53,657 nucleotides of DNA from contig JAWQFM010000003.1 in NCBI GenBank assembly GCA_033442325.1, forward strand, positions 2,743,421 to 2,797,077, written 5' to 3'. A model generated the notes under the pieces. It was given only the letters and a program-made list of their open reading frames with translations. It was not told where the DNA came from and did not search any database. Positions 29,108 to 53,248 of this stretch are shown piece after piece. The DNA is from Salpingoeca rosetta (Eukaryota > Protista > Choanoflagellata). Position numbers and translations under genes: made by a program. How positions within the stretch are numbered: position 1 is the first letter of the stretch; the number at the start of each line of letters is the position of its first letter.

Positions 29108-29807
29108 GACCACCCAACACCAGCAGCCACCAAGACGCGTTCTTGCGCGTGGGTTGTGTTGTGGGTGTGAGCCACACTGACCAGCACAGAGGGTTCTGCC
29201 TCTCGGCTTTCCTGTGTGCTCCCTTTTTTGACCTACCACCACACACGCTCACTTCTTTGTGTGTGCTCGTGTGTGTGTGTGTGTGATTGCCTTCTCACTG
29301 CAATCACAACAACAGCACGCGTCGTTGACGTTGTTGTTGACTGCTTGTTGTGGTTCCTCACACTTTGCTGAACTAACTCAGCGTTCCATTCCAACCTTTT
29401 GTCTCTTGTTGCGTGCATGTTTGCACGTTGTTCATTCACCAATCCACTCTCGTGCGACAAGCGTTGGCTGTTTCTTCCCTTCGTCCATCAACTTACCAAA
29501 GGGGAGCCACGCGCTGGGGGGTTTGCTCATCTGTACCCCTTCAGCTTCCCCCCCCCTTTCTCTTCTTGACTTGGGGTGGTTCATCTCCCCTTGACTTTAT
29601 TCTGACGCTGCGGCCCGACCGTCGGACAGCAGACACATGAAGTGCATCATGCCGATGCACACCCTTGACTCTTTTTCCCCGGTCTCAACAAGGTTCGTCA
29701 ACAGCACGACGACGTCGCGATCGATCGCACACACAACACAAAAGCACGATACACCCCTACTTCCCTCCCTCCTTCTGCACTGCTTCCCTTCCTCCTCGTG
29801 TTTAGTG

Positions 29808-29981
<174 letters not shown>

Positions 29982-30120
29982 GCACGCACGCACACACACA
30001 CAATAGATCACCACATTCTCTTTGCCCTCCCCGCCCCCCTTCTACCCAAACCTGACTTGCTCACAGCCATTTCTCACGCCCCCACCCACCCACATTTTTC
30101 GACCACACCTTGCGTGCAGC

Positions 30121-33100
30121 ATGAGCCGGAACATCCGACAGCGACGCGGTGCACGCGCACTCGTCGCTTCTCTTCTTCTTCTTCTACTTCTGACTCTCAC
30201 AGCCAGCTCAAGCCTGGCTGTTGCCCAGCCCTGCATGAACTCCGACGAGCCGGCATCGGGTCAGGCAGGCACACGTGTGACAATTTATGGAAGCAACCTG
30301 CTCGGTCAGGTTGGCACGGCCATCACCTCCGTTCGGCTCGCAGGTGTCCCTGCGGAAATCGTCGAAGGAACATCCCAGTCCCAGGTCGTCGTCATCGCGG
30401 CCGAAGGCACAGCCGGCGAGGGCGACGTCGTCCTCGAGGCAAACACGGGTGCAACCGCAGTCAGCCCAAACGCCTGGCAGTACATCAACCCTGGGCGCAT
30501 CGACAGCGTGGGCCCGGCCTCGGGACAAGTCGGCACCTTGGTCACCATCCGCGGCTACGAGCTCCTCGGCGGGGGCGATTCGCCGATAAACGTGACCTTG
30601 GGCGGCAAGCAGGCGACGGTCGTGTTGTACAACAGCACGCACCTCGTCGCGCGCGCCCCAGCCCGTGACCCGGGCCTGTCCCACGTCACCATTCGCAGCA
30701 ACACTGGTGCAGTGGTCACCGCGAACGATGCCTTCACGTATCTCAACCAGAGCAGCATCGCCGGCGTCAATCCAAACACGGGCCAGCTCGGAACCGTCGT
30801 TACCATCCTCGGCACGCGCTTGTTCGGCGGCGGCTCAGCTGTTGCAGAGGTGCAACTAGCTGGAACCTCCGCAGCCATTCTCCGTGCTACCGACACCGAG
30901 ATTGTGGTAGTCGCTCCAGACCATGGACCGGAGACCGGCGACGTGCTGGTTACAGCTGACACTGGGGCGACGACGACGAGCACGGGTGGCTTCACGTTTG
31001 CGGAGCGCGGCGCTGTGGCGACGGTGAGCCCGACAAGTGGCCAGCACGGAACGCTGGTGACGATTCGTGGCGACAGGCTTCGTGGCAGCGGCAGCGCGGT
31101 TGTCAACGTGACGCTGGCTGGACGCACAGCCACGGTGTTGGAGGAGAACAGCACGACGGTGATTGTGGCGGCTGGTGCAGGCGCCGAGACAGCTGTGGCT
31201 GGCGACGTTGTGCTGACTGCGGACACGGGTGCGGAGGTGACGCGTAGCGGCGTGTTTTCGTACGTCGCCGCTGGGGAGATCACCGACGTGACGCCCGCGT
31301 CTGGCGGCGCCGGGACGCGAGTGACGGTGCTCGGGCGTGACCTGTGTGGCGGTGGCAGCAGCGTGGTGCGCGTGCTGCTTGCTGGCTTTGAGGCCGATGT
31401 TGTGAGCGGCGGGTGTGCGCGCGTTGAGGCGACTGCGCGTGACTTTGGCATGGTGCTTTCTGGGCCGGTGCTGCTGATTTCGGACACTGGCGCGATGGTT
31501 GAGTCCAGCGGGGACGCGTGGACATACCTTGCTGAAGGGCGGATCACGTCTGTGTCGCCGAGCGCGGGGCAGGACGGCACTGAGGTGCACATCCGCGGCG
31601 AGCTGCTGCTGGGTGGCGGCACGAGTGCTTCTCGCGTGACGCTGGCTGGCGTGGCGGCGTTTGTGCTGACATCGAATGAGACGGACGTTGTGGTGCGCGC
31701 GTTCCCCGGGACGAGCAGCGGCGACGTTGTGATTGTTGGGGACACTGGCGTGAGCGTGCGGCTGACGAATGCATGGACCTACAGCGTGATTGAGAGCGTT
31801 GAGCCTGCATTTGGGCAGCGCGGCACGGTTGTGACGCTGAGCGGGCGCGCCTTGCTTGGCGGCGAGGGCGACGTGTCACGGGTGCTCCTTGGCAGCGTGG
31901 AAGTGAGCGCGATCCTGCGGAACAGCAGCGACGAGGTTGTTGTTGTTGCTGGCGACCGGACTGTGTTTGCTGACGCGGTTGGGCACGTTGAGATTGAGCT
32001 TGCGAGCGGACGGCAGGTTGTTCTTCGGGATGCTTGGACGTACCGGCGTGCGGGCTCGATTGCGAGCGTTGTGCCTGCGTCTGGGCACTTTGGAACGGTG
32101 GTGCGCATTGGCGGCAGCCGGCTGCTTGGCCATGGGCAGTCGCTGGTTGGTGCAACGCTGGCTGGCGTGGCTGCTGAAGTTGTGTCTGCGAGCAACACGG
32201 ACGTTGTGCTGGTGGCGAATGCAAGCAGCAGCGCACGCTCTGGCAACGTTGTTCTCATTGCGGACACTGGTGCGACGGTTGTTCTTGAGGACGGCACGAG
32301 CGGGCTTGCGGAGTGGACGTACGTGGCGCCCGGCGTGATCAGCGAGGTTGAGCCGAGCTTTGGGCAGGTTGACACGCGCGTGACGGTGCGCGGGAGCGGC
32401 CTGCGCGGCGGCGCGGCGAGCACGGCACGAGTTGTGCTGGCTGGCGTTGAGGCGACGCAGGTTGTGTCTGACAGCGACAGCGAGATTGTTGTTGTTGCTG
32501 GGGCGATTGCGGGCGGCGTTTCGCGGGCCAACGGCAGCGTGCGCGTGTTTGGCAGCACGGGTGCTGAGGTGTCTGGGAGCGGCCTGTTTTCGTATGTTGC
32601 GCGGGGCGTGATCAGCGATGTTGAGCCGAGCAGTGGGCACGGCGGGACGCTTGTGACGATCCGGGGCGAGCGGCTTGATGGCAGCGGCGGCAGCGTTGCT
32701 CGGGTGCGGCTTGCTGGGGTGTGGACGAGCGTGATCTTGCGGCAGAACAGCAGCGAGGTAGTTGTTGCAGCGGAGGCGAGCAGCGGCGCTGTTGCGGGCG
32801 GCGATGTGCTTCTTGAGTCTGCGAGCGGGGCGACGGTGGAGGCGGCTGGGCGGTTCAGCTATGTTGCGCCGGGCGTTGTTTCTGCCGTTGAGCCTGGGAG
32901 CGGAAGCGCGGGCACTGTGGTGACGGTGCGCGGGAGCGGGCTGCTGGGCGGCGGCGGTGCAGCTGCGGCTGTGCGCCTGAGTGGCGTGGAGGCGCAGCAG
33001 GTGCTGTGGTCGAACGAGAGCGTTGTTGTGGCTGTTGCCGGTGCCGGCAGCAATGTGACGGGCGACGTTGAGATTACGGCAGACACTGGTGCTGTGGTGC

Positions 33101-36100
33101 GCGGGCTTGCGTCGAGCGGGCGCGGGTTCACGTACGTTGTGGCTGGCGTGATCGAGGCTGTGCAGCCGAGTTCTGGCCGCGTTGGCACGGTGGTGACGCT
33201 GTCTGGGAATGGCCTGCTTGGTGGCGGTAGCGCTGCTGGGCAGGTGAGCCTGGGCGGGGTGCCGTGTGAGGTGCTGACCTCGGGCGCACTTGAGGTGGTT
33301 GTGCGCGTTGGTGCTGGCGGCGTTGGCGGCGCTGTGGGCGATGCTGTGGTTGTGGCTGACACGGGCGCTGAGGTTCGCAAGGCAGCTGCGTGGACGCAAG
33401 TTGACGCGGGCGCGATTGACAGTGTGACGCCCGGGTCTGGACAGGCTGGGACGCTTGTGAATGTGACTGGGCGTGTGCTGCTGGGCGGCGGGAGCCGGAT
33501 TGTTGAGGTTATTCTCGGCGGGACGGCTGCGTCTGCTGTCGTGGACGGGGACCAGGAGACGTTTGTGACTGTTGTTGCGAACAGAAGCGCGAGCGCCGGC
33601 GACGGCCGCGTGGTTGTTCGCGCAGACACTGGCGCAGAGGTGTCGCTGGACGCTGCATGGAACTACACGGACGTTCCCACGGTTGAGAGCACGTATCCTT
33701 CAAGTGCCGCGGCGGGCTCCCGCATCATGTTTGTCATCAGCCACCTCATTCAGCCTGGCGATTCCTTGGCTGTGGTGACTGTTGCTGGGCAATCAGCCGC
33801 CTTCTCCGCCATCAACGCGACGCACGTATTTGTGACGCTTCCAAGCTCCAGCGCTGTCGGCGACACCACCGTGCAGTTTACGTCTGCGCGCGGAACACTG
33901 CTCGCCGCCACCGTCACGGTGTCTCCATCGCCTTTCGTGTCATCAATCACACCAAACACCGGTCAGCTTGGCACGGTTGTGTCTTTGGCTGGCAGCGACT
34001 TGCTTGGTGGAGCCGACGATGTGCAAGCTGTGCTCTTTGGCACCACACCAGCTGTCGTCCAATCGGCAGCCGACACACTCATTGTGGTTGAGGCGCCTTT
34101 TTCCGCCTCCAATACAACCGTCGACGTTGTCATCGTCACCGGGCTTGGCGCCGCCTTTGTGCAGAGTGACGCCTTTGCTTACCTGCGCCCGGCTTCTGTG
34201 GCCAGCGTCATTCCATCGTCTGGCCAGGTTGGGACCATCGTTTCCATTGACGGCTCTGGCTTCAACGACACGGCCTCTGCTGTGGAGCGCGTGTTGCTCG
34301 GCGACACACCGGCAACGCTGCTGGCTGCGTCTGACACGAGCATTGTGTTCCGGGTCACCAACGTGTCCCACGAGCTGCTGGACGTGACGCTGGTAACCGG
34401 CACGGGCGTACGTCATGTGCTTGCGTCCTCGTTCCGCGCATACTCGCCTGGCGTGATTGCAGACGTGACGCCGTCTTCCGGGCGCGAAGGAACAGAGGTT
34501 GTCGTGTACGGCACACATCTGCGCGCGCACAGCCCTGCTGTGACCAACGTCTCGTTTGGCTCGTACCCCGCTCGCATTGTGCGGGAGACTGACTACTTTG
34601 TGAGCGTTGTCCTGACTCAGGCTCCAGCGACGAGCGAGCTCGTCGACGTTTCGCTGACGACCACCTTTGGCGCTGTGACAACCAAGCGCGACGCCTTTAT
34701 GTTTGTGCCGCGCGGCAATGTGACCGCCGTATCCCCTTCGTCTGGTGTTGGCGGCACGCGCGTGGTCATCCAGGGCAGCAACCTGCTCGGTGGCGGCACA
34801 CGCATCATCTCTGTGACCCTTGCCGGCGTTGACGCCACGCTGGTGCACTACAACAACACGGTGATTGAAGTCGTGGCTCGCGCGGGCGACCCAGGCCTTG
34901 GAGATGTCATCATCTCCAGCAACACGGGCAGCGTCACCGTCCTGGACAACGCATGGGCGTATGTTCCCGTGGGTGAGATTCACGCCGTGCTCCCCGCACA
35001 GGGCCAGGCCTATGCGCGCGTGACTGTCGTGGGCCTGGGGCTGTTTTCTGGGGCGCCTGGCCTCGAGCGTGTTCGCCTGGCTGGCGAGGACGTGTTGCGC
35101 ATCGTGTCGGCGAGCGACTCGAAGGTGGTGGTCATTGCCCCCGCCGTTCCGGCGGCGACAACGGGCAACGTGGAGCTTGTTTCCACCACCGGTGCCAAGG
35201 TTACGCGGACAGCGGGGTTTTCGTTTGTGGACCCTGCCAACGTTACGGCCGTGACCCCATCCTCTGGTCAATTGGGCACGCGCGTCACGCTCGCAGGATC
35301 AGACCTCCTGTGCGGTGACTCTGCCCTTGCGTCTGTCCGCATCGGCGGGCAGGAAACGGCCATTCTGTACGCGTCATCCGAACAGGTGATTGCTCGCGTG
35401 AACACGACACTCGAGCCCGGCATGTACCAGCTCACCGTGACTGCCGCCTCTGGCGCTAACTACACTGCTGCGCCACACCAGTTTGAAGTGCTTGCGCAGG
35501 GCGCCATCGACGCCGTGCAGCCAGCCGCTGCACAAGCTGATGCCTTTGTCACCATCCGTGGGCGTGGCTTGTTTGGTGGGGCTGCGTCGCTTGCAACCGT
35601 GTCCTTGGGCTCGCCCGCCGTCACCGCCACAATCGTGAGCCAGTCGAGCTCCGTGGTGGTGGTGCAAGTGCCCCGCGTGCCGTATGCCGCCGGCGCCGCT
35701 CCAATCACGCTCACGGCCGCTTCAGGTGCGCTTGTGTCCAACGCCACCGCGTTTGAGCTGCTCGAGCCCGGCGTCATCACCAGCGTCGCCCCTTCCTCTG
35801 GGCAGGAAGGCACATTGGTGACCATCGCCGGCGAGCGCCTGCTGGCTGGCAGTGATTCCCTTGATGTCGTGTACATCGCCAACACATCTGCAGTGCAAGT
35901 GCTGCTTGCCACTGACACCCGCGTGGTTGCGCGCGCCGCTGCTGGCCCGCTGGTTGTGGACGACGTCGTGCTGGTTGGCGCTGCTGGGGGCCGCGTGGTC
36001 GCTCCTGACGCATGGCACCGCCTGGCTGCAGGGCAGATTGCCACTGTCACTCCAACGATTGGGCAAGAAGGCACGTTTGTCAATGTGACTGGAACGAACC

Positions 36101-39100
36101 TGCTTGCTCACAGCGATGGTCTTGCCAGCGCTTCCCTTGCCGGTACGCCTGCAGACGTCATCGCCGCGACGCCCCAGCTCGTGCAGTTGCGCGCACGCGT
36201 GTCATCCCCGCGCACGGGCCCCGTGGTTCTTCAGGCCAGCTCAGGCGCAGTCGTCGATAGCCGTGGCGTTGCCAACTTCACCAGCGCACAGGCTGGACGC
36301 ATCGATACGGTCGCCCCGGCCGTGGGGCGCGCCGGCACGTTTGTGACGCTTGTCGGCACCAACCTGCTCGGCCACGCCGCCTCGCTGTCCTCTTGCGTTG
36401 TTGCAGAGGACGCGCTGGCGGCCATCGTGGATGCCAACAACACGCGCGTCGTTGTGCGCCTGCCAGAGGGGCCTGCGCCTGGGCTCGTGAACATCACGCT
36501 GCAGGCGACTTCTGGTGCCCTCGTGCATCGTGCGCATGCGTTTGAATATGTTGGCGAGGGTGCCATCTCCACCGTGCTCCCGGCATCTGGTCAGAAGGGC
36601 ACCCGCGTCACCATTCGTGGCACCGCTCTGCTTGGCGCAGGCGATCACGCAACGTCCATCACCCTCGCTGGCGCAGTCACTACGAGGGTGTTGTCTTCCA
36701 ACGACACCACCATCGTTGTTGAGGCGCCCGCCGGTGCAGCCCAGGGTTTGGGCGCCGTCTCCGTTGAGGCAAACACCGGCGCTGTGGTGTCCCAGGAGGA
36801 TGCCTTTGCCTTCATCGAGCCGGGCCAAATCACTCTCTTCTCCCCGAGCTCTGGTCAGTATGGAACGTGGGTCAACATCACGGGCCAAAACCTCCTTGGC
36901 GGCGGCTCCACTGCCGCAGATGTGCTCTTTGGCGGCTTCTCTGCGGATGAAGTGGCGTTTGCCTCCCCCTTCATGGTCCGTGCGCGAATCGGGCAGCAAG
37001 TGCCGTCGCCGGGGCCAATCAACGTGACCATTGTTGCCGACACGGGTGCGCGGGTGACGAGTGAGGGCGCCTTTACCGTGACCTCCTCCAGCACGATCGC
37101 GTCCGTGAGCCCCGCTCTGGGCCAGCGCGGCACACGGGTGACCATCAGTGGTCAGAACCTGTTTGGCGCAGGCCCTGCCCGCATCGCAGCCGTACACCTG
37201 GCTTCCGTGTCCGCAGTGGTCCTGAACGGCTCCAGTGACACGCAAGTGATCGTTCAGGCGCAGGCCAGCCCCGTGGCCGTTGCAAACGCCACGGTGACAG
37301 TGGAGGCAGCCAGCGGCGCCTTGACTGTGGCGCCAGCGTCCTGGTCATACATTGCCCCGGGCGCCATTGCCAGCGTCACGCCAGCCATGGGACAGGCGGG
37401 AACGCGCGTCACCATCACCGGCACTAACCTGCTTGGTGGTGCGCCTGCGCTTGCGCTCGTGTCCATCGCAGGCTCCCCTGCGCAAGTTGTGAGCCAGAGC
37501 AACACGCGCGTGGTTGTCAGGGCCGGCGCCGCCGCCCCTGGCTTGGGCGACGTTGTGCTTGAGGCCTTGTCCGGAACGCTCGTGGAGCAAACAAGCGCCT
37601 TCACGTACACCAACATGAGCGAGATCACGTCTGTGTCGCCCTCTGTGGGTCAGGAAGGTACCTTGGTCACCATCCGGGGCACCCGCCTGCGTGGCGGCGC
37701 GAACCGCGTGGCCAACGTGACACTGGCTGGTGTTCTGGCCACCACCCTCTCTGAGGATGACACCACCGTCGTTGTTCGGGCCAGCTTCTCCTTCAGCGCC
37801 ATGTCTGGCCCCGTTGTTGTCATGTCGGACTCTGGCGCTCGCACACAGGCGCCGCAGCCGTTCTCGTACCTCGAGCCCCCATCGGTGGTCTCCATCGCCC
37901 CAAGCACGGGCCAGGAGGGCACGCGCCTCACCATCACAGGCCTTCGCCTGCACAATGGCGGAAGCGCGGTGGTGTCCGCTTCCCTCGGCGCGTTCAACGC
38001 CTCTGTTGTTTCGTCCAACGACACGGAAGTGGTCATTCGCGCCGGCGCTGGTCCTTCAACGCAGACGGCTGTGGACATTGTGCTGCAGTCTGACACGGGG
38101 TCCATCACTCGCGGTGCTACGCCATGGACGTTTTCTCCTCCTGGCAGCATCGCCATTGTCGATCCAACCACTGGGCAGCAAGGCGCGCTTGTGCGCATCA
38201 CAGGCACCAACCTGTGCGGCGGCGGCTCATCCATCGCTCGCGTGCGTCTCGCCAACGTCGAGGCCGAGATCCTGTCCCAGACGTCGTGCGGCCTGCTGGA
38301 GGTGCGGGCCGGTGCATACGGTGCACCGGTCACGGGCTCCATCGAGTTGGAATCTGACACGGGGGCCCTGGTCACCAAAGCCGATGCCTGGACATACGTC
38401 ACCTCGGGCTTCATCTCCAGTGTCACGCCTGCTGCCGGTCAGAGCGGGGAGCTGGTCAGCATCCTGGGCAGCAACCTCTTTGGTGGCGCAAGCACAGCCT
38501 CGCAGGTCACTTTTGGTGGTGTCCCTGCCACCATCGTCAGCAATGGCAACACATCGCGCATCGTCGTTCAGATCAACGCTGGCCCGCAAAGCGGACAGCC
38601 GAACCTGGGCGATGTTGTCATCACGGGCACCTCGGGCGTGGTGATCCGGGCCGTCGATGCCTTCACCTACTCCACGGTTGACCGCGTATTCCCCAGCAGT
38701 GGCCAGGGCGGCACGCGCGTGACCATCAGCGGCGTTGCGCTGCTTGGTGACAACACGCAGCTTGAGCGCGTCGAGCTTGCAGGCATCTCTGCCGCCAGCA
38801 TCATCTCCTTCAACAGCACTCAGGTCGTGTGCGTGGCCCGCGCCGCCGGTGTGTCCCAAGCGCAGCCCGGGCAGGTTGTGCTGGTTGCCACCACACAGGA
38901 AATTACCAGCACAGGCACAGCGGACTGGACATACCAGCCACCCGGCGCAATCGCATCCGTGAACCCAGCGCGCGGTCAGCGCGGCACGCTCATCACCGTT
39001 CGCGGCTCCACACTGCTTGGCTACGGCGAAAGGCTGGTGCAGGTGACGGTGGCCAACGTTACCGCAACCCGCATCATCAACGCTACCAACTCGGTGGCTG

Positions 39101-42100
39101 TCGTGGAGGCCGGGCTAAGAACTGCGGGCGCCACCGGCAACGTTGTTTTGGTCGCCGACACAGGCGCAACCATCACCGCCCTTGCGGCCTTCACATACGC
39201 AGACGCGCCCGTGCTGGCCGCTGTGTCCCCTTCCTCCGGCCAGCTCGGAACCCACGTCACGGTCACGGGCCAGAACCTGCTCATGGGCTCTGATAGCCTG
39301 AGGTCGGTCTCCATCGCAAACGAATCGGCAACCATTCTCTCGCAGAACGACACACACGTTGTGGTGCGCGCGCCACGCTCCTCACCGAAAACAGGCCTCG
39401 TGCGGCTTGTGTCCTCCGAGTTTGCTTCCGTGACTGGCCTCTCCTTTACGTTCCTTGAGGAGGGCGTGGTCAACACCGTATCCCCTAGCTCTGGACAGGG
39501 CGGCACGCGCGTCACCCTCACCGGTGAGCGTATGTTTGGCGGTGCCTCGGGTATCGCTGCGGTTGAGCTGGCTGGCGTTCCTGTCCAGGAGATTGTGTCC
39601 AGCAACACCACACACGCTGTGGTCATCGCCAGCGATGCAAGCGCAGTCGCACCAGCCGCTGTCACCGTCATTGCCAACTCGGGCGCGCTCGTGACATCGG
39701 CGGACCCTGGCGCGTGGCAGTACTTGACCCCTGGCGCAATCACGAGCGTCGACCCGGACATGGGCCAGGTTGGCACACGCATCACCATCACCGGCCAACG
39801 TCTTCTTGGGGGCGGCACCTCCATCGCTTCCGTTCGTCTCGGCACTGCCGGTGCTCGGGTTGTGAGCGGCAGCTCCACGACCGTTGTTGCCGTCGTGCCA
39901 AGCGGCGCTGCAGGCGTGCGCGACGTTCACGTCGTTGCCAACACGCTTGCAACGACGACGCTCTGGACAGGCTTCACGTTCCTGGAGGAGGGCGTCATCG
40001 ACAGCTTGCAGCCAAGCTCAGGTCGACTGGGCACCCGCGTGACCATTCACGGCTTGCGCCTTCTCGGTGGCAGTGATGCACTGCAGCAGATCCTGTTTGG
40101 AACGGTCCCTGCGACGATCATCGACTTCAACACAACCACCGTGGAGGCTTTTGCCCCAGCCATGGCCGCGGGTACCAGCAATGTTACCCTCGTTAGCGAC
40201 ACAGGTGCCGTCGTGCGTTCTGTGGACGGAGCTTGGACACAGGTCGACGCCGGCCAAATCCTCTCTGTTGAGCCAGCGGCGGGCATTCCGACAGCCTTGG
40301 TCACCATTCGTGGCCAGGACCTGCTTGGCATCGGTACCATTGCGCAACAGGTCACACTTGGTGGCTCTCTGGCCGAAGTTCAACAGTCAAACGCAACTGT
40401 GGTGATCGTGAGAGCCGGCGTTCGCCCGGCGGTGCCAGACTCAGCGGTCACCGTTGTTGCTGACACCGGCGACACGGTGTCGGCTGACAGCGTGTGGACC
40501 TTCCATCCTCTGCCGAACATCACGAGTGTTGCGCCTGCCAATGGACAACAAGGGACGCGCGTAACCATTACGGGAAGTGACCTCATCACAGGTGGCGTGC
40601 GTGTGGCCTCAGTGCAGTTGGCAGGCGTCACCGTGTCAGAAGTGCTGTCGCAATCGCCTGATTCGCTTGTTGTCATCGCTGGGCCATCATCCACCAGCGT
40701 GAGCGGCGCGGCGACTATCACCCTCACTTCCGGCGCGTCGTTTGCCAGCTCACAATCCTTTGAGTACTTGGCACCGGCCGACATCAGCAGCGTGAGCCCA
40801 GGCTCTGGAACGCTGGGGACGGTCATTACGGTGTCCGGCTCCCACCTTCTGGGGGGCGGCACGACTGTCGTCGCTGCTCGTATTGGTGATGATGCTGCTG
40901 AACGCGTTCTCTTCGCCAATGACTCGCGCGTTGTGTTCAAGGCCGGCAATGCAGACACGCCGTCAGCCAACAGAACTGTTTTGTTGACTGCAGATACAGG
41001 CGCGTTCGTTTCCGTGAGCAGTGCCTTCTCTTACATCACGCCTGCAAGCGTTTTGTCCGTCTCACCCAGCTCCGGAACACAGGGCACCAGGGTCACCATC
41101 TCTGGGCAGCGCCTCTTCAGCGATGGCTCATACCTCACAGAGGTGCTACTCGCGGGTGTTCGCGCCCAAATCCTCAACATGACTGAGGTACAAGTTGTTG
41201 TGGCATGTGGCTTTGCAAACCAAACCAGTGGGCCCGTGGTCCTCGTCAGCAACACCGGTGGCAGGATTGAACAAGCTCAATTTTCCATCATCAAGCCGCC
41301 CGTGCTCCTGGCAGCCAGCCCAGACAGTGGGCAGGAGGGCACCCACGTGATCCTGTACGGCGAGCGCCTTCGTGCCGGTGGCAACGCCATCACGCAGGTC
41401 ACCCTAAACGGTGTCGCCGCCACGATTGTGGATGAAACAAACGTGTTCGTTCGCGTGATTGCACAGGATGGCCCGGTGGGGCGCGGCCCGATTCACCTCA
41501 CCGCAAACACCGGGGGCGTCGTGCAGTCAACCGTGGCTTGGGAGTACTTGACAAAAGCGGTGATCGATACTGTCGCTCCAAGCAGTGGACAGCTAGGGAC
41601 TCTTGTTACGATACAGGGCAGCAACCTGCTCGGCGGCGGCACGGAGGTAATTCGTGTCATCCTCGCAGGCACCGATGCCACCATCTTGTCTCAAAACAAC
41701 ACGCACATCGTCGTGCGAACAAGCCGTGGCACAGGCTTGCCCACTCAAGGAGATGTCGTCGTCATCAGTGACGAACTCTCTCGAGTAGTTGCTGAAGACG
41801 CCTTTGCATACATCGCTCCTGGAGATGTCGATGGTGTGATGCCAAGCCAAGGCAGCTTTGGGACGCGCGTCACGATCGTGGGCACGAACCTGCTTGGCGG
41901 AGGGTCGTCGGTGTCACTGGTGGAGCTTGCTGGCGTTGAGGCACAGGTTGAGTCTGCGACAGCGGGGCAAGTTGTGGTCATTGCACAGGCATCGAACGCC
42001 ACGAGCGTTGGAGATGTTGTGCTGCACTCTGACACTGGTGCTGTCGTCGTCCAGTATGACGCCTGGCAGTACGTGACACCTGGCCGCATTCTGACAGTAA

Positions 42101-45100
42101 CGCCGATGTCTGGACAGGGTGGCACGTACGTTGACATTGTGGGCACAGGGCTCTTGAGCGGCTCGCGCGATGCCGGTGCGGTCCACCTCAGCGGTGTGGC
42201 TGCTGTTGTTCTGAGCGCAAACGACACGCACGTGCGTGCGCGTGCTGGCGAGGGCGTGCCTGGACTCGGGGACGTGGTTGTGACGTCTGCGGATGGCGCG
42301 CCTGTTGTGGCTGCGGATGCGTGGACGTACACTGCAGCTGGCAACATCTCGGGCATTGCCCCTGTGAGCGGTCAGGAGGGCACTCACGTCACCATCCGCG
42401 GCGTTGCGCTGCGCGGTGCTGGGGCACTTGTGCACCGTGTGCTGCTTGGAGACAGTGAGGCTGACGTGTTGTTTGAGAATGACACGCTGGTGGTTGTTCG
42501 CGCTGGCCATGGGGCTGCAGGCGTTGTGCATGTCGTGCTTGAGTCGTCATCTGGCGCGCTTGTTTCGGCGGACAACGCCTTCACATACCTTGAGCGCGGC
42601 GAAGTTGCAGCTGTGTCACCGACATCTGGGCAGCTTGGCACGCTTGTGACCATCACTGGAGCGCGGTTGCTTGGTGGCGGATCGTCGATCCGCACCGCGA
42701 CGCTCTCCGGTGTGAGTACGGAGGTGGTGGGCGCCACAGCTTCAACGGTAGTTGTGCGTGTGACATCGTCATTTGCCAGTATGACCACGGGCGATGTGAT
42801 GCTTGTGTCCGACACGTACGCGGTTGTTCGTGGCAGCGGCTTGTGGACAGGGCTTCCTGACGGAACAATTGCCGACGTTGCACCCAGCGCTGGCGTTGTG
42901 GGCACGCTTGTGACTGTGCGCGGTGCCAACTTGCTTGGGTACGCCGCTGGCCTGGATGAGGTGACGCTTGCTGGTGTGAATGCAACGATTGTGTCGGCGA
43001 ATGCTAGCGTTGTCGTCGTGGCTGCTGGATCATCGCTGTCTGCTGTGACGGGCGGTGTGGTACTGGTGGCAACGAGTGGTGCAACCGTTTCGGCGAGCGG
43101 AGCGTGGAGCTACGTGGCGCCAGGCCAGATCACTCGCGTGCGCCCTGCGTCTGGCCAGGTGGGCACGCGGGTCACGATTGAAGGAACTGGCCTTCGGGCG
43201 GCGGCGTCTGCAGTGGCGACAGTGCTGCTCGGTGACCTCACGTCTACTGTGCTGACCTCAAACGACACGACTGTGGTGGCGGTGTGCCCTGATGGCCCTG
43301 CCTCCGGCGTTCCCGAGCGCGTGAAGGTTGTGGGAGTGAGTGGCGGTTTTACGCTGGCGGAGTCACAGTTCACGTTCCTGGAGAAGGGTGTGATCGCAGA
43401 CGTATCACCAGAAATTGGCCAGGTTGGCACGCGCCTTGTTGTGAGTGGCGAGCGCCTACTTGGTGGTGGTGCGCGTGTGACGCGCGCCGAAATCGGCGGC
43501 GCTGTGGCTGAGATTGAAAGTAGCAATGCCACGACGGTGGTGCTGGTTGCGGGCGCTTCGAGTGCTGGTGCAGCCGACGTTGTGCTTGTGGCCGACACTG
43601 GTGCAACTGTTCGCCTCGACGCAGGCTTCACGTACCTCGAAGAAGGCGTCATTGAGCAGATCAGCCCACGTGGCGGCCAGGAGGGCACGCTTGTGACGAT
43701 TGAGGGTGAACGGCTGCTGGGAGGCGGCGCTGCGCTTTCGCGAGTGCTGCTGGCAGGACAGCCGGTGCTGCATGTTATGTCTGCGAGTGATACGCTCGTG
43801 GTGGTGCGTGCAGGTGCCGGAATGCCGGGCACAGGTGATGTGATTGTTGAGTCGACGAGTGGCTCCCGGGTGACGCTTCCAGGTGGGTGGATGTACTTTG
43901 TGCCCAGCAGCATTGCGGACGTGCAGCCGTCGTCCGGCCAAGTCGGGACTGTGGTTGACATCTCTGGTAGCAACCTGCTTGGTGTGGCCAACGGGACTGC
44001 TGTTGCACAGGTGTGGCTTGACGGCACGGCTGTCAGCTCTATTCTGATTGGCGATCGCCAGGACCTCGTGCGTGTGGTTGCAGCAAGGAACACGAGCATG
44101 GGTGTTTTGGGCAGCGTCGTCGTGGAAGCCGACAGCGGCGCGCTGGCCTCGGTTGATGGCCGATGGACGTACTTGCTGGAGGGCGTGATTTTGGGCGTTG
44201 TCCCCGCATACGGCCAGGTTGGTACCCGGGTGACTATCTCTGGTGCGCGGCTGCTTGGCGGTGGCAACACGGCTGTCAACGTGACGCTTGATGGCACACC
44301 CGCAAGCGTGCTGTCATGGGGACCAGAGCAAGTTGTGGTGCGGGCCGAGCGCAACAGCAGTGCTGAGGTTGGTGGAATGGTGTCAGTTGTCAGTGATACT
44401 GGTGCCATTGTGTCTGGGGCTTCCCTGTTTGCGTACCGGACGGAGGGCCACATTGATCAAGTGGAGCCGTCCACTGGACAGGCGGGCACGATTGTGACCA
44501 TCACCGGCCTGCGTCTGCGCGGGCACGGTGTTGTGGTTGACCGTGTGTTGCTTGGAGGCGCTGAAGCTGGCGTGTTGAGCGAAAGCGATACAGCTGTTGT
44601 TGTGCGCGTGCCAGATGCTTCTGCGGGCGTCGTTGATGTTGTGATCGTTGCTGACACTGGGGCGACGACGACGAGCACGGGTGGCTTCACGTTTGCGGAG
44701 CGCGGCGTTGTGGCGACGGTGAGCCCGACAAGTGGCCAGCACGGAACGCTGGTGACGATTCGTGGCGACAGGCTTCGTGGCAGCGGCAGCGCGGTTGTCA
44801 ACGTGACGCTGGCTGGACGCACAGCCACGGTGTTGGAGGAGAACAGCACGACGGTGATTGTGGCGGCTGGTGCAGGCGCCGAGACAGCTGTGGCTGGCGA
44901 CGTTGTGCTGACTGCGGACACGGGTGCGGAGGTGACGCGTAGCGGCGTGTTTTCGTACGTCGCCGCTGGGGAGATCACCGACGTGACGCCCGCGTCTGGC
45001 GGCGCCGGGACGCGAGTGACGGTGCTCGGGCGTGACCTGTGTGGCGGTGGCAGCAGCGTGGTGCGCGTGCTGCTTGCTGGCTTTGAGGCCGATGTTGTGA

Positions 45101-48100
45101 GCGGCGGGTGTGCGCGCGTTGAGGCGACTGCGCGTGACTTTGGCATGGTGCTTTCTGGGCCGGTGCTGCTGATTTCGGACACTGGCGCGATGGTTGAGTC
45201 CAGCGGGGACGCGTGGACATACCTTGCTGAAGGGCGGATCACGTCTGTGTCGCCGAGCGCGGGGCAGGACGGCACTGAGGTGCACATCCGCGGCGAGCTG
45301 CTGCTGGGTGGCGGCACGAGTGCTTCTCGCGTGACGCTGGCTGGCGTGGCGGCGTTTGTGCTGACATCGAATGAGACGGACGTTGTGGTGCGCGCGTTCC
45401 CCGGGACGAGCAGCGGCGACGTTGTGATTGTTGGGGACACTGGCGTGAGCGTGCGGCTGACGAATGCATGGACCTACAGCGTGATTGAGAGCGTTGAGCC
45501 TGCATTTGGGCAGCGCGGCACGGTTGTGACGCTGAGCGGGCGCGCCTTGCTTGGCGGCGAGGGCGACGTGTCACGGGTGCTCCTTGGCAGCGTGGAAGTG
45601 AGCGCGATCCTGCGGAACAGCAGCGACGAGGTTGTTGTTGTTGCTGGCGACCGGACTGTGTTTGCTGACGCGGTTGGGCACGTTGAGATTGAGCTTGCGA
45701 GCGGACGGCAGGTTGTTCTTCGGGATGCTTGGACGTACCGGCGTGCGGGCTCGATTGCGAGCGTTGTGCCTGCGTCTGGGCACTTTGGAACGGTGGTGCG
45801 CATTGGCGGCAGCCGGCTGCTTGGCCATGGGCAGTCGCTGGTTGGTGCAACGCTGGCTGGCGTGGCTGCTGAAGTTGTGTCTGCGAGCAACACGGACGTT
45901 GTGCTGGTGGCGAATGCAAGCAGCAGCGCACGCTCTGGCAACGTTGTTCTCATTGCGGACACTGGTGCGACGGTTGTTCTTGAGGACGGCACGAGCGGGC
46001 TTGCGGAGTGGACGTACGTGGCGCCCGGCGTGATCAGCGAGGTTGAGCCGAGCTTTGGGCAGGTTGACACGCGCGTGACGGTGCGCGGGAGCGGCCTGCG
46101 CGGCGGCGCGGCGAGCACGGCACGAGTTGTGCTGGCTGGCGTTGAGGCGACGCAGGTTGTGTCTGACAGCGACAGCGAGATTGTTGTTGTTGCTGGGGCG
46201 ATTGCGGGCGGCGTTTCGCGGGCCAACGGCAGCGTGCGCGTGTTTGGCAGCACGGGTGCTGAGGTGTCTGGGAGCGGCCTGTTTTCGTATGTTGCGCGGG
46301 GCGTGATCAGCGATGTTGAGCCGAGCAGTGGGCACGGCGGGACGCTTGTGACGATCCGGGGCGAGCGGCTTGATGGCAGCGGCGGCAGCGTTGCTCGGGT
46401 GCGGCTTGCTGGGGTGTGGACGAGCGTGATCTTGCGGCAGAACAGCAGCGAGGTAGTTGTTGCAGCGGAGGCGAGCAGCGGCGCTGTTGCGGGCGGCGAT
46501 GTGCTTCTTGAGTCTGCGAGCGGGGCGACGGTGGAGGCGGCTGGGCGGTTCAGCTATGTTGCGCCGGGCGTTGTTTCTGCCGTTGAGCCTGGGAGCGGAA
46601 GCGCGGGCACTGTGGTGACGGTGCGCGGGAGCGGGCTGCTGGGCGGCGGCGGTGCAGCTGCGGCTGTGCGCCTGAGTGGCGTGGAGGCGCAGCAGGTGCT
46701 GTGGTCGAACGAGAGCGTTGTTGTGGCTGTTGCCGGTGCCGGCAGCAATGTGACGGGCGACGTTGAGATTACGGCAGACACTGGTGCTGTGGTGCGCGGG
46801 CTTGCGTCGAGCGGGCGCGGGTTCACGTACGTTGTGGCTGGCGTGATCGAGGCTGTGCAGCCGAGTTCTGGCCGCGTTGGCACGGTGGTGACGCTGTCTG
46901 GGAATGGCCTGCTTGGTGGCGGTAGCGCTGCTGGGCAGGTGAGCCTGGGCGGGGTGCCGTGTGAGGTGCTGACCTCGGGCGCACTTGAGGTGGTTGTGCG
47001 CGTTGGTGCTGGCGGCGTTGGCGGCGCTGTGGGCGATGCTGTGGTTGTGGCTGACACGGGCGCTGAGGTTCGCAAGGCAGCTGCGTGGACGCAAGTTGAC
47101 GCGGGCGCGATTGACAGTGTGACGCCCGGGTCTGGACAGGCTGGGACGCTTGTGAATGTGACTGGGCGTGTGCTGCTGGGCGGGCGGGAGCCGGATTGTT
47201 GAGGTTATTCTCGGCGGGACGGCTGCGTCTGCTGTCGTGGACGGGGACCAGGAGACGTTTGTGACTGTTGTTGCGAACAGAAGCGCGAGCGCCGGCGACG
47301 GCCGCGTGGTTGTTCGCGCAGACACTGGCGCAGAGGTGTCGCTGGACGCTGCATGGAACTACACGGACGTTCCCGTGATCACAGACGTTACACCCAGCTC
47401 TGGCCAGCAAGGCACTGTTGTGACTGTGAGTGGCAACAACCTCCTTGGTGGCGGATCTCAGGTTGTGTCTGGCAGCTTGAGTGGCGTCGCTGTGAGCGAA
47501 GTACTGAGCTCTTCGGACACGCGGGTGGTCGTGGTTGCATCTGCATTGAACACGAGCTCCACGGGTGGAGTTGTGCTGTCTGCTGATAGTGGTGCGACGG
47601 TTACATTGAGCCAGGCGTGGACGTACTTGGAGCCTGCCGTCATTACAGGCGTGGAGCCCAGCTCTGGCCTCCTTGGCACACTGGTCACCATCTCTGGAAC
47701 TGGCCTTTTGGGCGGCGGCAATAGGACGGCGACTGCTTGGTTTGGAGCGACGGAAGCCGAGAGCGTCGAGGCGTCATCCGACAGTGTCGTTGTTGTGCGT
47801 GTGGGCCCAAGTGCACCTAGCCTCGTTCAGGTGCGGCTGCAATCTGACAGTGGTGCTTGGGTGCGCTTGGAAGATGCGTTCCAAGTGCTTCCAGCTGGAG
47901 TCGTTGAGGCTGTGTCGCCGGCTTACGGCCAGGCAGGTACACGCGTGACGATCACTGGGCACACATTGCTGGCTGACGGCGTGAATCTCACACAAGTGCG
48001 CCTGGCTGGCGTGGAAGCTGAGATCGAGTCAGCAAACGCAACGCAAGTTGTTGTTGTTGCCGCGCATGCATCTGCTGGTGTTGGCGATGTCGTGCTTGTA

Positions 48101-49277
48101 GCTGACACGCTTGGTCGTGTTGAGGCTGCTGGTGCGTGGGAGTACCGCCGACGCGGACAGATCTCGTCCATCACACCCACTTCTGGTCATGAGGGCACTG
48201 AAGTGCTGATTTTGGGCCAGGATCTGCTGGGTCACGGTGAGGACCTGGTTCAAGTGCGCCTGGGTGGAGTTGTGGCACGTCTTCTTGACCGTAACAACTT
48301 CTTTGCGCGTGTTGTTGCGGGTCGTGGCTCCCCGGCCGGACCAGTTGACGTGCGGCTCACCGCGGACACGGGCGCTGTCGTGGAGCAAGCTGACTTGTGG
48401 ACGTACGTTGCACAGGCTGTGATTAGTTCTGTGACGCCTTTGACAGGGCAGGCTGGTACCTTGGTGACGATTCGTGGCAGCAACCTCTTGGCTGGTGCTG
48501 CGTCTGTGTCTGAGGTTCGCCTTGCCGGCGTCTCAGCCACCATCGTATCCTTCAACGAGTCAGTGGTGATTGCACGTGCTGCTCAGCCACCTGCGTCTGC
48601 TCCTGCTGGTGGAATCAACGTCACAACGTCTTCGGGTGCGTTTTATGGCGGTCCTGCCGGAGTAGTCTGGACTTACATGGATGCTGGTGACATTAACATT
48701 GTCATGCCAAGCCGAGGCAGCTTTGGGACGCGCGTCACGATCGTGGGCACGAACCTGCTTGGCGGAGGGTCGTCGGTGTCACTGGTGGAGCTTGCTGGCG
48801 TTGAGGCACAGGTTGAGTCTGCGACAGCGGGGCAAGTTGTGGTCATTGCACAGGCATCGAACGCCACGAGCGTTGGAGATGTTGTGCTGCACTCTGACAC
48901 TGGTGCTGTCGTCGTCCAGTATGACGCCTGGCAGTACGTGACACCTGGCCGCATTCTGACAGTAACGCCGATGTCTGGACAGGGTGGCACGTACGTTGAC
49001 ATTGTGGGCACAGGGCTCTTGAGCGGCTCGCGCGATGCCGGTGCGGTCCACCTCAGCGGTGTGGCTGCTGTTGTTCTGAGCGCAAACGACACGCACGTGC
49101 GTGCGCGTGCTGGCGAGGGCGTGCCTGGACTCGGGGACGTGGTTGTGACGTCTGCGGATGGCGCGCCTGTTGTGGCTGCGGATGCGTGGACGTACACTGC
49201 AGCTGGCAACATCTCGGGCATTGCCCCTGTGAGCGGTCAGGAGGGCACTCACGTCACCATCCGCGGCGTTGCGCTGC
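30121..49277 (+). CDS. Giant secreted or cell-surface IPT/TIG-repeat protein (>6,300 aa, single exon, 3' end lost in a gap; one +1 frameshift at ~47183)
   Basis: ATG at 30121 followed by a signal peptide (LVASLLLLLLLTLTASSSLAVA). Then roughly 70-75 tandem ~85-aa repeats with consensus I-x-x-V-x-P-x-x-G-Q-x-G-T-x-V-T-I-x-G-x-x-L-L-G-G...V-x-L-A-G...D-T-G-A...W/F-T-Y, typical of IPT/TIG domains. The repeats continue in ORF 47168-49423 up to the gap. Confidence 0.9.
30955..33678 (+). repeat. Internal duplication A, copy 1 (~2.72 kb)
   Basis: Near-identical to 44650-47374. The offset of 13,695 is confirmed by identical alternative-frame ORFs. Confidence 0.95.
41839..42412 (+). repeat. Internal duplication B, copy 1
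   Basis: Near-identical to 48704-49277 (offset 6,865). Confidence 0.95.
44650..47374 (+). repeat. Internal duplication A, copy 2
   Basis: Differences noticed from copy 1: GCT>GTT (A>V) near 44708 and one extra G at 47182-47184. Confidence 0.95.
48704..49277 (+). repeat. Internal duplication B, copy 2 (truncated by the gap)
   Basis: MPS(Q/R)GSFGTRVTIVGTNLL...HVTIRGVAL is repeated at nucleotide level up to the N run. Confidence 0.95.
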
Positions 49278-49377
49278 NNNNNNNNNNNNNNNNNNNNNNN
49301 NNNNNNNNNNNNNNNNNNNNNNNNNNNNNNNNNNNNNNNNNNNNNNNNNNNNNNNNNNNNNNNNNNNNNNNNNNNNN
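49278..49377. other. Assembly gap (100 N, true size probably unknown), hides the C-terminus of the IPT protein
   Basis: Exactly 100 N. Confidence 1.
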
Positions 49378-49589
49378 ATTGGACCTCTCATGCCCAGCAA
49401 TAAACAGCATCGGACAACCTTGATTGTGTATTTCTGCTGCCTCAAACTATCACGCAGTGCCCATCCCGTCTTCAGCACACACACACAGACACACACAGAC
49501 ACACACAGTTACACAGACACACATCCACACAGACACGCACGGTTACACAGACACATACACACACAGTTACACAGACACACAGGCACAAC

Positions 49590-50017
49590 TCAAGCCATTG
49601 TGGATTTGCTGAAGAGGTCAACTGTGATTGCGGAGAGAAAGGCGGGAATGGAGTGGAAACGGTGCAGATTCGCAAGAATGCGCTCATCCAGCGATGCGGA
49701 GAATTGCGTTTCAAGGAGTTGCAGCCCTTGCGGAGACGAAGCAAAGAGGAGATAGTCATCGGCGGACTCCGCGTACATCGAGTGCAGCCGGTACCTTGAG
49801 GCTTGTACCACGTCAATCTGGTAGCCCAGCAGCTCGTAGCACGCTTCGCGGAACTCGCGCACGTTGTTGTTGAACACCTGAGTTGATCGTCAGGAAACCC
49901 GTGCGCACGCATGGCGGAAACGGAGGGGTGCAGTCAGCTGTGCTACGCGCGAGCAAAATGGCAAAGGCGAAGTCACATTGCAGAGATGCCAAAGCGATCA
50001 CGCACACACACACACAC

Positions 50018-50091
<74 letters not shown>

Positions 50092-50518: not shown

Positions 50519-50550
<32 letters not shown>

Positions 50551-50553
50551 CTG

Positions 50554-50595
<42 letters not shown>

Positions 50596-53179: not shown

Positions 53180-53248
<69 letters not shown>

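What the first reader, a model, noticed from the sequence alone, without database searches (positions are those of the whole stretch)
30121..49277. Giant single-exon IPT/TIG-array surface protein (>6,300 aa)
At least 19 kb of uninterrupted coding sequence encodes a signal peptide plus roughly 70-75 tandem IPT/TIG repeats with no other recognisable domain. Established: plexin/MET carry about 4-6 such domains and fibrocystin-L about 14, so this array is far longer. It is rich in N-x-S/T sequons at a recurring repeat position (NSTH, NETD, NDTH, NATQ) and nearly Cys-free. Inference: a filament some hundreds of nm long acting in adhesion, prey capture, collar or theca structure, or self-recognition (Dictyostelium Tgr proteins are TIG-based).
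Basis: partly seen in the sequence, partly recalled or inferred. Interest (0 to 1): 0.75.

Follow-up and report, generated by a model that had tools for sequence, protein, structure and literature searches.

The report
Giant secreted IPT/TIG-repeat protein, choanoflagellate
This is a real but already annotated and unstudied Salpingoeca rosetta gene (PTSG_12890) for a protein of more than 6,386 residues: a signal peptide followed by 72 plexin-type IPT/TIG domains, probably a long sugar-coated extracellular filament made by solitary and thecate cells.

Summary
From ATG 30121 to the N gap at 49278 there is a signal peptide, then 72 complete and one cut IPT/TIG repeats of about 88 aa, back to back. 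No other domain is present. There are 89 N-x-S/T sequons (about 30 expected) and 14 Cys.

It is not uninterrupted. An extra G at 47182 shifts the frame, inside a 2.7-kb block that is otherwise identical to 30955-33678. A second identical block runs into the gap. The C-terminus is missing from the assembly.

The gene is already public as PTSG_12890 (hypothetical, partial). It has giant paralogues in the same genome and relatives in three other choanoflagellates. Sponges have membrane receptors with 23-26 repeats of the same type.

Published RNA-seq tables show expression in thecate and swimming cells and almost none in colonies. Relatives end without a membrane anchor, in a conserved Cys-bearing cap.

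A published call of bacterial origin rests on a metagenome-bin contig that is one open frame from end to end. I think that call is unsafe.

The array has a 26-domain super-period shared across the family.

This scan had already found sibling genes in this genome (s1-436060, s1-443135) and the duplication in this same stretch (s1-440703). I rate it a new member of a known kind, of moderate interest.

The parts
30121..30234 (+). Start codon, signal peptide (about aa 1-35, A-V-A cleavage motif) and a lone Cys at aa 38, just before the first domain
   Evidence: This is the only strongly hydrophobic window in the protein. The start matches the public model P0001.
30235..47184 (+). IPT/TIG repeats R1 to the first part of R65, in frame 1, back to back, 80-93 aa each
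   Evidence: Repeat HMM. Pfam PF01833 only. PDB profile hits to plexin-A1, CGTase domain D, Sec5 and MET IPT domains.
47182..47202 (+). Frame break: an extra G at 47182 (GGGCGGGCGGG here, GGGCGGCGGG in the twin copy at 33487) leads to a stop at 47200-47202
   Evidence: The assembly is a 454/Sanger hybrid, so a run-length miscall is plausible but not shown.
47186..49277 (+). Rest of R65 to the first 22 residues of R73, in frame 2, open up to the gap
   Evidence: Pfam TIG E = 6.5e-52.
30955..33678 (+). Block A (end of R3 to R13), first copy of a 2.7-kb near-identical duplication
   Evidence: blastn self-comparison gives 99.93% over 2,725 bp. The only differences are C/T at 31013/44708 and the G indel.
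44650..47374 (+). Block A' (end of R55 to R65), second copy, 52 repeats downstream, in frame and in repeat register; carries the frameshift
41835..42412 (+). Block B (R45-R46), first copy of the second near-identical duplication
   Evidence: 99.65% over 578 bp.
48700..49277 (+). Block B' (R71-R73), second copy, exactly 26 repeats downstream; runs into the gap
49278..49377 (.). 100-N assembly gap hiding the rest of the array, the C-terminus and most of the 3' UTR
   Evidence: No other contig of the assembly continues the sequence, and the family's C-terminal cap is not found for this gene.
38536..38571 (+). 36-nt stretch removed as an 'intron' in the public model. It encodes VSNGNTSRIVVQ, a normal part of repeat R32, so it is most likely coding.
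   Evidence: R32 is full length only with this stretch included.
47130..47190 (+). 61-nt GT..AG 'intron' in the public model that steps over the frameshift. It deletes a core strand of R65 that is intact in the twin R13.
   Evidence: The exact bounds are my reading of the sequence.

Best explanation
What is shown:
- This is the S. rosetta gene PTSG_12890. It is one long intron-free exon encoding a signal peptide, a lone cysteine, and at least 72 IPT/TIG domains joined without linkers.
- It is heavily supplied with N-glycosylation sequons, and no transmembrane segment is visible.
- It belongs to a choanoflagellate family of giant TIG-only proteins. The family's arrays are built from a 26-domain module.
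- Family members with a known end finish in a conserved cap (W-x-Y-D-x-P-S-N-I-T-x-V-C-V) with no membrane anchor.
- It is transcribed in thecate and solitary swimming cells and nearly silent in rosette and chain colonies.

What is inferred:
- The protein is secreted and N-glycosylated, and folds into a stiff string of beta-sandwich beads about 0.3 micrometre long.
- The single cysteines at its two ends link it by disulfides, either end to end or to a partner.
- This would form fibrils of the theca, the attachment material or the coat of solitary cells.
- The frameshift at 47182 is more likely a sequencing error than a real truncation.
For: Domain content, tiling and sequons.

Fold: AF2 pLDDT 97.3, pTM 0.88; Foldseek top hits are plexin A1 IPT3-6 and MET. 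The PDB profile search gives plexin-A1 at E = 1.9e-12.

Identity and family:
- P0001 is 100% identical (PTSG_12890).
- PTSG_03923 is 37% identical, MONBRDRAFT_29861 36%, and environmental kin 41-42%.
- S. infusionum and S. helianthica transcripts also belong to the family.

C-terminus:
- The cap occurs only at the extreme C-termini of six relatives and of PTSG_12887.
- PTSG_03923 ends ...AVVSAECV, followed by non-coding (TG)n.

N-terminal Cys: also present just after the signal peptide in M. brevicollis and the sponge relatives.

Expression (Fairclough 2013 supplement, PMC4054682):
- FPKM: ThA1 2.8, ThM 3.2, ThAM 6.1, SwM 2.3, CCM 0, RCA1 0.01, RCA2 0.28, RCAM 0.20.
- The same pattern holds for PTSG_12887 and PTSG_03923.

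26-domain period.

Frameshift: the twin copy is intact, and the assembly is partly 454.
Against: - The C-terminus of this gene is unseen, so an anchor cannot be excluded.
- Sponge relatives, and the contig behind P0020, carry a Cys-rich region after the TIG array; the sponge proteins also have a TM segment.
- Expression is low (FPKM 2-6), and the swimmer sample came from the same culture as thecate cells.
- No protein-level, localisation or glycosylation data exist.
- Disulfide linking through terminal cysteines is pure inference.
- The order and copy number of the near-identical blocks may be wrong in the assembly.
- The frameshift could be real.
- The signal peptide was judged by eye.
Confidence: 0.6

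Rival explanations
1. It is a membrane-anchored receptor or adhesin. After the TIG array the missing C-terminus would hold a Cys-rich furin-like region, a transmembrane helix and a cytoplasmic tail, as in the sponge relatives.
For: - Sponge proteins (Halichondria, Oscarella, Corticium) have a signal peptide, 23-26 TIG repeats of the same type (53-60 bits per repeat against the PTSG_12890 repeat HMM), about 50 Cys in the post-TIG region, one TM segment and a Pro-rich tail.
- P0020, a close environmental relative, ends in furin-like Cys-rich repeats.
- The gene's own end is hidden in the gap.
Against: - The TIG-only relatives whose true ends are known have no such region. These are PTSG_12887, PTSG_03923, M. 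brevicollis 29861, S. infusionum and S. helianthica.
- The MAD1 stop lies only about 215 sequenced bases after the gap, so the whole anchor region would have to sit inside the gap.
Confidence: 0.2
2. It is a gene acquired from bacteria by horizontal transfer, a bacterial-type TIG adhesin, as listed by Matriano et al. 2021.
For: - PTSG_12890, PTSG_12887 and PTSG_03923 are scored 'FOREIGN' (Alien Index about 235-258). Their best hit is PHR02316.1 'Sulfitobacter sp.' at 35-39% identity.
- The gene is intron-free in a genome with 7.5 introns per gene and a median exon of 117 bp.
Against: - That best hit (P0020), and a second hit labelled bacterial (P0022, a 'Planctomycetes' MAG), each lie on a 7.1-7.7-kb metagenome-bin contig. 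Each contig is one open frame from end to end with no neighbouring gene.
- Their repeats score 76-80 bits against the choanoflagellate repeat HMM, the same as true choanoflagellate proteins.
- They also share the 26-domain register, with z = 6-7.
- P0020 ends in furin-like Cys-rich repeats like the sponge proteins.
- Bacterial proteins that carry other bacterial domains score only 18-25 bits per repeat, less than the sponge proteins at 53-63.
- One narrow pattern scan of bacterial species genomes found only isolated TIG domains.
Confidence: 0.06
3. What is seen is partly an assembly product or a broken gene. Either the frameshift is real and the protein ends at 47202 (5,693 aa), or near-identical 26-domain modules were collapsed, mis-ordered or mis-joined, so the true gene differs in length or is more than one gene.
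For: - There are two blocks at 99.7-99.9% identity and no repeat pairs between 60% and 90% identity.
- The second block ends at the gap, 4.3 kb from the scaffold end.
- The public model needed two tiny 'introns' to stay open.
- A sibling contig was read earlier as collapsed copies of a 26-domain unit.
Against: - All four flanks of block A/A' are different sequences, and both junctions are in frame and in repeat register. Two copies must therefore exist.
- The frame downstream of the shift stays open for 697 codons to the gap.
- The twin copy lacks the extra G.
- Paired 4-kb, 10-kb and 40-kb Sanger clones were used in the assembly.
- The gene is transcribed.
Confidence: 0.14

Closest known systems
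Choanoflagellate giant TIG-only proteins: S. rosetta PTSG_03923 and PTSG_12887, M. brevicollis MONBRDRAFT_29861, and S. infusionum and S. helianthica transcripts (all uncharacterised)
   Same: - Same repeat type, 60-80 bits per repeat.
- Arrays of 11-64 repeats with no linkers and no other domain.
- A Cys after the signal peptide where the true N-terminus is known.
- The two S. rosetta paralogues share the thecate/swimmer expression pattern.
- The 26-domain register is shared with M. brevicollis (z = 6.3), more weakly with PTSG_03923 and S. infusionum, and was not tested for PTSG_12887 or S. helianthica.
   Different: - Only 36-42% identical.
- This one is the longest in the S. rosetta assembly.
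- It carries two near-identical internal blocks and a frameshift.
- Its C-terminal cap cannot be seen.
Sponge 'mucin-19-like'/uncharacterised TIG receptors (Oscarella XP_065838203.1, Halichondria XP_064405099.1, Corticium XP_062511394.1)
   Same: - Signal peptide followed closely by a Cys.
- 23-26 repeats of the same TIG subtype, at 28-33% identity.
- The repeat number equals the choanoflagellate module size.
   Different: - The sponge proteins have one module only, followed by a Cys-rich furin-like/GF_recep_IV region, a TM helix and a Pro-rich tail.
- Position-by-position register with PTSG_12890 is not significant, z = 2.3-3.2.
Plexin and MET IPT domains
   Same: Best sequence-profile and fold matches among solved structures.
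   Different: - No sema, PSI, TM or cytoplasmic domains are seen.
- Plexin and MET have 4-6 IPT domains against 72 or more here.
- The automated 'semaphorin receptor' GO term is unfounded.
Fibrocystin / PKHD1L1
   Same: Large extracellular proteins with many IPT/TIG domains. By general knowledge, PKHD1L1 coats microvillus-derived stereocilia.
   Different: No PA14, G8 or parallel beta-helix domains are found by Pfam in the visible 6,386 aa.
Bacterial giant TIG/Ig-like repeat proteins (for example P0009, P0011-P0015)
   Same: Thousands of residues of tandem TIG domains.
   Different: - Only 18-25 bits per repeat against this repeat HMM.
- They are combined with FG-GAP, VCBS, FlgD or other bacterial domains.

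Membership tests
IPT/TIG domain (Pfam PF01833) | Match to the family HMM above the gathering score | tested here: met
   436, 484, 386 and 174 bits against a cut-off of 20.9. 57 individual stretches pass.
IPT/TIG domain (Pfam PF01833) | Ig-like beta-sandwich fold like the plexin/MET IPT domains | tested here: met
   AF2 pLDDT 97.3, all-beta. Foldseek top hits are plexin A1 IPT3-6 (E = 1e-11) and MET.
Choanoflagellate giant TIG-only secreted family | Signal peptide, early lone Cys, then TIG repeats only, with no linkers | tested here: met
Choanoflagellate giant TIG-only secreted family | 26-domain super-period in register with other members | tested here: met
   Mean identity at lag 26 is 0.405 against 0.369 at other lags (p = 1.8e-5). 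Register z is 6.3-7.4 at period 26 only, against P0005, P0002, P0003 and P0020.
Choanoflagellate giant TIG-only secreted family | C-terminal cap W-x-Y-D-x-P-S-N-I-T-x-V-C-V, no TM | not testable with these tools
   The 3' end lies in the gap. The cap is absent from the visible 6,386 aa and from other contigs.
Plexin / semaphorin receptor (automated GO term) | Sema domain, PSI domains, TM and cytoplasmic GAP domain | tested here: not met
   Pfam finds TIG only in the visible part, and there is no TM-like window.
Aspartic peptidase (automated GO term) | Pepsin-like or retropepsin fold | tested here: not met
   No peptidase family is found in Pfam. The D-T-G-A motif is a conserved loop of the TIG repeat.
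Fibrocystin/PKHD1L1 | PA14, G8 and parallel beta-helix domains beside the TIG arrays | tested here: not met
   None found in the visible part.
Sponge TIG-furin-like-TM receptors | Cys-rich furin-like/GF_recep_IV region, TM helix and Pro-rich tail after the TIG array | not testable with these tools
   That region would lie in the gap. The shared repeat subtype was shown.
Bacterial TIG adhesins (HGT origin) | Closest relatives sit in bacterial genomes among bacterial genes | tested here: not met
   The two hits labelled bacterial are ORF-only MAG contigs. Bacterial proteins with other bacterial domains are more distant than the sponge proteins. The scan of bacterial genomes was narrow.

The most novel reading that the evidence does not exclude
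A 26-domain IPT/TIG module is an ancient unit shared by choanoflagellates and sponges. Sponges keep one module on a membrane receptor. Choanoflagellates multiplied it in register into secreted arrays of 60-80 domains. These arrays join through a single cysteine at each end into disulfide-linked fibrils that build the theca or coat of solitary cells and are switched off when cells form colonies.
Probability: 0.15. Interest if true: 0.6.

Novelty: new member of a known kind. Interest (0 to 1): 0.4.

Why it matters
Choanoflagellates are the sister group of animals, and their secreted and surface proteins are studied for clues to how cell adhesion and matrix arose.

- This family of giant TIG-only proteins is expressed in solitary and thecate cells but not in colonies, and it has clear sponge relatives. 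It offers candidates for the unknown protein parts of the theca or cell coat.
- It corrects three things in public annotation: a likely false bacterial-origin call, false protease and semaphorin-receptor GO terms, and two artificial introns.
- It is not a new kind of molecule, and siblings in the same genome were already reported by this scan.

Tried and rejected
- Full-text search for PTSG_12890, PTSG_03923 and MONBRDRAFT_29861 found no paper. The gene appears only in supplementary tables.
- A search of the whole assembly for a continuation of the 3' end found only the gene itself, block B and 79% matches in the C10 paralogue.
- A search for the family's C-terminal cap found only PTSG_12887. 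The second hit, on C36, proved to be a chance match beside a (TG)n run.
With three close repeats it used one narrow peptide pattern and found four bacterial loci holding isolated TIG domains (0-34 bits). This is too narrow to prove absence.
- The 3,987-aa open frame on C26 looked like a possible anchored paralogue, but it does not match the repeat HMM at all. It has a PA14-like start and an SH2-like tail, so it is a different family.
- A positional register between the sponge repeats and this array was tested and is not significant.
- The flanks of environmental contigs L023 and L024 gave no taxonomic clue.
- The stored captions of the Fairclough supplement files seem shifted by one, so I relied only on the column headers inside the sheets.
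- No coordinates of the AF2 model were available, so the rise per domain and the curvature of the rod could not be measured.
- The large all-against-all protein search was not used, as the word search answered the question.
Full report
**Where and what.** The window is the last 53.7 kb of scaffold C3 of a 55.45-Mb assembly. That size matches the published Salpingoeca rosetta genome (55.44 Mb). The word search returns a 100% identical public protein, 'hypothetical protein PTSG_12890, partial [Salpingoeca rosetta]', 6,350 aa (P0001). So the feature is real, but it is already annotated.

**Checking the observation.**
- ATG 30121 follows a (CA)n run and a pyrimidine-rich stretch. It opens a frame that runs to a stop at 47200-47202.
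- A second frame (+1) is open from 47168 and runs to the 100-N gap at 49278.
- Reading the break with an X gives 6,386 residues.
- A repeat HMM built from the protein tiles residues 39-6386 with 72 complete repeats and a 73rd cut by the gap. The repeats are 80-93 aa long, with no linkers apart from 5 aa and 1 aa at two junctions.
- Pfam finds only PF01833 (TIG) in all four pieces.
- A profile of 60 repeats hits plexin-A1 IPT (E = 1.9e-12), CGTase domain D, Sec5 and MET among solved structures.
- An AF2 model of repeats 2-4, using the other repeat triplets as its alignment, has pLDDT 97.3 and pTM 0.88 and is all-beta. Its best fold matches are plexin A1 IPT3-6 and MET.
- The first 35 residues hold the only strongly hydrophobic window and end in A-V-A. 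I read this as a cleaved signal peptide, by eye.
- There are 89 sequons against 29.9 +/- 4.8 in shuffles. 29 of them lie at one column of the repeat.
- Cys and Lys are 14 residues each out of 6,386.

- The coding sequence is not uninterrupted. A blastn self-comparison shows just two strong internal matches:
  - 30955-33678 equals 44650-47374 (2.7 kb, 99.93%).
  - 41835-42412 equals 48700-49277 (578 bp, 99.65%), and this second copy runs into the gap.
- Within the 2.7-kb pair the only differences are a C/T and one extra G at 47182 in a GGGCGGGCGGG context. That G causes the frameshift.
- The twin copy is intact, and the assembly is a 454/Sanger hybrid. I therefore think a run-length miscall is more likely than a real truncation, but I cannot show it.
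- The public model keeps the frame open with a 61-nt GT..AG 'intron' across the shift. It also removes 36 nt at 38536-38571. Both deletions cut normal parts of a TIG domain, so I take them as annotation patches.
- All other repeat pairs are 15-60% identical (median 37%), with nothing between 60% and 90%.
- Both junctions of the large duplicate are in frame and in repeat register, and all four flanks differ. So two copies do exist, though their order and number could be wrong.

**A 26-domain super-period.**
- The two identical blocks lie 52 and exactly 26 repeats apart. An earlier scan note on a sibling contig mentioned a 26-domain unit, so I tested it here.
- With identical pairs left out, mean identity at lag 26 is 0.405 against 0.369 at other lags (Mann-Whitney p = 1.8e-5).
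- Lags 52 and 26 are also the top lags in M. brevicollis MONBRDRAFT_29861 and in the environmental relative P0002.
- I compared the repeats of relatives with this array modulo a period of 20 to 32. Only period 26 stands out, with z = 6.3-7.4 for P0005, P0002, P0003 and P0020, 6.1 for P0022 and 4.4 for S. infusionum. PTSG_03923 reaches 4.7 at period 26, but periods 28 and 29 score as high or higher there. Elsewhere other periods mostly reach 4 or less, with single values up to 4.5.
- The array is thus about 2.8 copies of an old 26-domain module. The recent identical blocks are in-register exchanges between modules, or unresolved copies of them.

**Family.**
- The genome holds several giant open frames full of TIG hits. 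They include PTSG_03923 on C10 (5,300-aa open frame) and PTSG_12887, which lies 32 kb upstream of the window.
- Relatives at 36-42% identity include MONBRDRAFT_29861 (5,763 aa, 64 repeats), environmental proteins of up to 6,354 aa, and complete transcripts of S. infusionum (2,821 aa) and S. helianthica (989 aa).
- Six database relatives, plus PTSG_12887, end in the same cap, W-x-Y-D-x-P-S-N-I-T-x-V-C-V. The motif occurs nowhere else in any of the 134 proteins scanned.
- PTSG_03923 ends ...AVVSAECV and is followed by (TG)n and non-coding DNA.
- None of these has a hydrophobic tail.
- The N-terminus carries a Cys two or three residues after the predicted cleavage site in PTSG_12890, M. brevicollis and the sponge proteins.
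- An earlier follow-up on PTSG_03923 reached the same 'lone cysteine at each end' reading. I reached it independently, and it remains an inference.

**Sponge relatives.**
- A large set of 2,400-3,100-aa proteins at 28-33% identity carries TIG together with GF_recep_IV and, in many of them, Furin-like domains.
- Cluster members name Halichondria panicea, Oscarella lobularis ('mucin-19-like') and Corticium candelabrum.
- Each has a signal peptide, an early Cys, and 23-26 repeats scoring 53-60 bits against my repeat HMM. About 50 Cys follow in the post-TIG region, then one TM-like segment and a Pro-rich tail.
- The repeat count equals the choanoflagellate module size. The position-by-position register is not significant, so I leave that link as a hypothesis.

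**The published bacterial-origin call.**
- Matriano et al. 2021 list PTSG_12890, PTSG_12887 and PTSG_03923 as foreign, with best hit PHR02316.1 'Sulfitobacter sp.'.
- That protein is P0020. A similar hit, P0022, is labelled 'Planctomycetes bacterium'.
- Each lies on a 7.1-7.7-kb metagenome-bin contig that is a single open frame from first to last base, with no neighbouring gene.
- Their repeats score 76-80 bits, like true choanoflagellate proteins. They share the 26-domain register. P0020 ends in furin-like Cys-rich repeats, as the sponge proteins do.
- Bacterial proteins that also carry FG-GAP, VCBS or FlgD domains score 18-25 bits per repeat, well below the sponge proteins.
- I conclude that the two 'donors' are most likely mis-binned eukaryotic contigs and that descent within Choanozoa fits better.
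- The absence of introns (median exon 117 bp and 7.5 introns per gene in this genome) is striking, but it is shared by the whole family and is not evidence of transfer by itself.

**Expression.**
- The supplementary tables of Fairclough et al. 2013 give for PTSG_12890, in FPKM: ThA1 2.8, ThM 3.2, ThAM 6.1, SwM 2.3, CCM 0, RCA1 0.01, RCA2 0.28, RCAM 0.20.
- The read counts are 291, 253, 488 and 189 against 1, 26, 20 and 0.
- PTSG_12887 and PTSG_03923 behave the same way.
- So the gene is transcribed, at a low level, in thecate and solitary swimming cells, and it is nearly off in rosettes and chains.

**The 3' end.**
- After the gap only about 215 sequenced bases remain before the stop of a convergent MAD1 gene. 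Its last exon is at 49593-49877 on the minus strand (PF05557, E = 9e-35).
- No other contig continues the gene.
- The end, and any anchor, is therefore unknown.

**Reading.**
- Best supported: a secreted, N-glycosylated, stiff beaded filament of 72 or more IPT domains. At about 4 nm per Ig-like domain (general knowledge) this is about 0.3 micrometre long. It would be made by solitary and thecate cells.
- Possibly it is linked through its terminal cysteines into fibrils of the theca, the attachment material or the coat.
- Rivals are a membrane receptor of the sponge type, a real truncation or mis-assembly, and bacterial origin.

**Verdict.** This is a new, unstudied member of a known kind of protein. 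It is already in the databases, and siblings were already seen by this scan (s1-436060, s1-443135; the duplication as s1-440703).

Noticed in passing
window 30235-49277, and relatives P0005, P0002, P0003, P0020, P0022: The TIG array has a 26-domain super-period, shared in register with relatives including M. brevicollis. Sponge relatives have 23-26 repeats in total.
   Followed up: yes
L019 (NVUC01000185.1, 'Sulfitobacter sp.' MAG) and L020 (NYYZ01000016.1, 'Planctomycetes' MAG): Both contigs are one open TIG frame from end to end. L019 starts and ends with the same Cys-rich peptide, as if a repeated unit had been closed on itself. They look like mis-binned eukaryotic DNA, and L019 is the basis of a published HGT call.
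   Followed up: partly
window 38536-38571 and 47130-47190: The public gene model removes these two short stretches as introns of 36 and 61 nt. Both lie inside normal TIG domains and look like patches to keep the frame open.
   Followed up: partly
window 30121-49277 (annotation): Automated GO terms for this gene ('aspartic-type endopeptidase activity', 'semaphorin receptor activity') have no domain support. The first comes from the D-T-G-A loop motif repeated in the TIG domains.
   Followed up: yes
window 49593-53657, minus strand: A convergent multi-exon coiled-coil gene. Its last exon (49593-49877) is the C-terminal domain of the mitotic checkpoint protein MAD1 (PF05557, E = 9e-35). Its introns are full of (CA)n/(TG)n runs.
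   Followed up: partly
G000:C26:811877-823837, minus strand (outside the window): A 3,987-aa open frame with a PA14-like start, Pfam TIG hits, one TM-like segment near residue 3553 and an SH2-like cytoplasmic tail. It belongs to a different TIG family from the one studied here.
   Followed up: no
G000:C10:1900316-1907637 against C10:1790-1798 kb (outside the window): The end of scaffold C10 repeats part of the PTSG_03923 gene in inverted orientation, with identical HMM scores. This is probably an assembly duplicate.
   Followed up: no
window 30121-49277: Lysine is almost absent (14 of 6,386 residues, 0.22%) while arginine is 4.8%. One environmental relative (P0024) shows the reverse (K 7.4%, R 1.1%), so this may be mostly base composition.
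   Followed up: partly
window 29806-30003, 49470-49580, 50000-50090: Long (CA)n microsatellites flank the gene. (TG)n runs also follow the stop of the paralogue PTSG_03923.
   Followed up: no
window 33682-33921 (repeat R14): One degenerate repeat (14.8 bits against 56-96 for the rest) sits right after the end of duplicated block A. Its partner 52 repeats downstream (R66), after block A', is a normal repeat.
   Followed up: no
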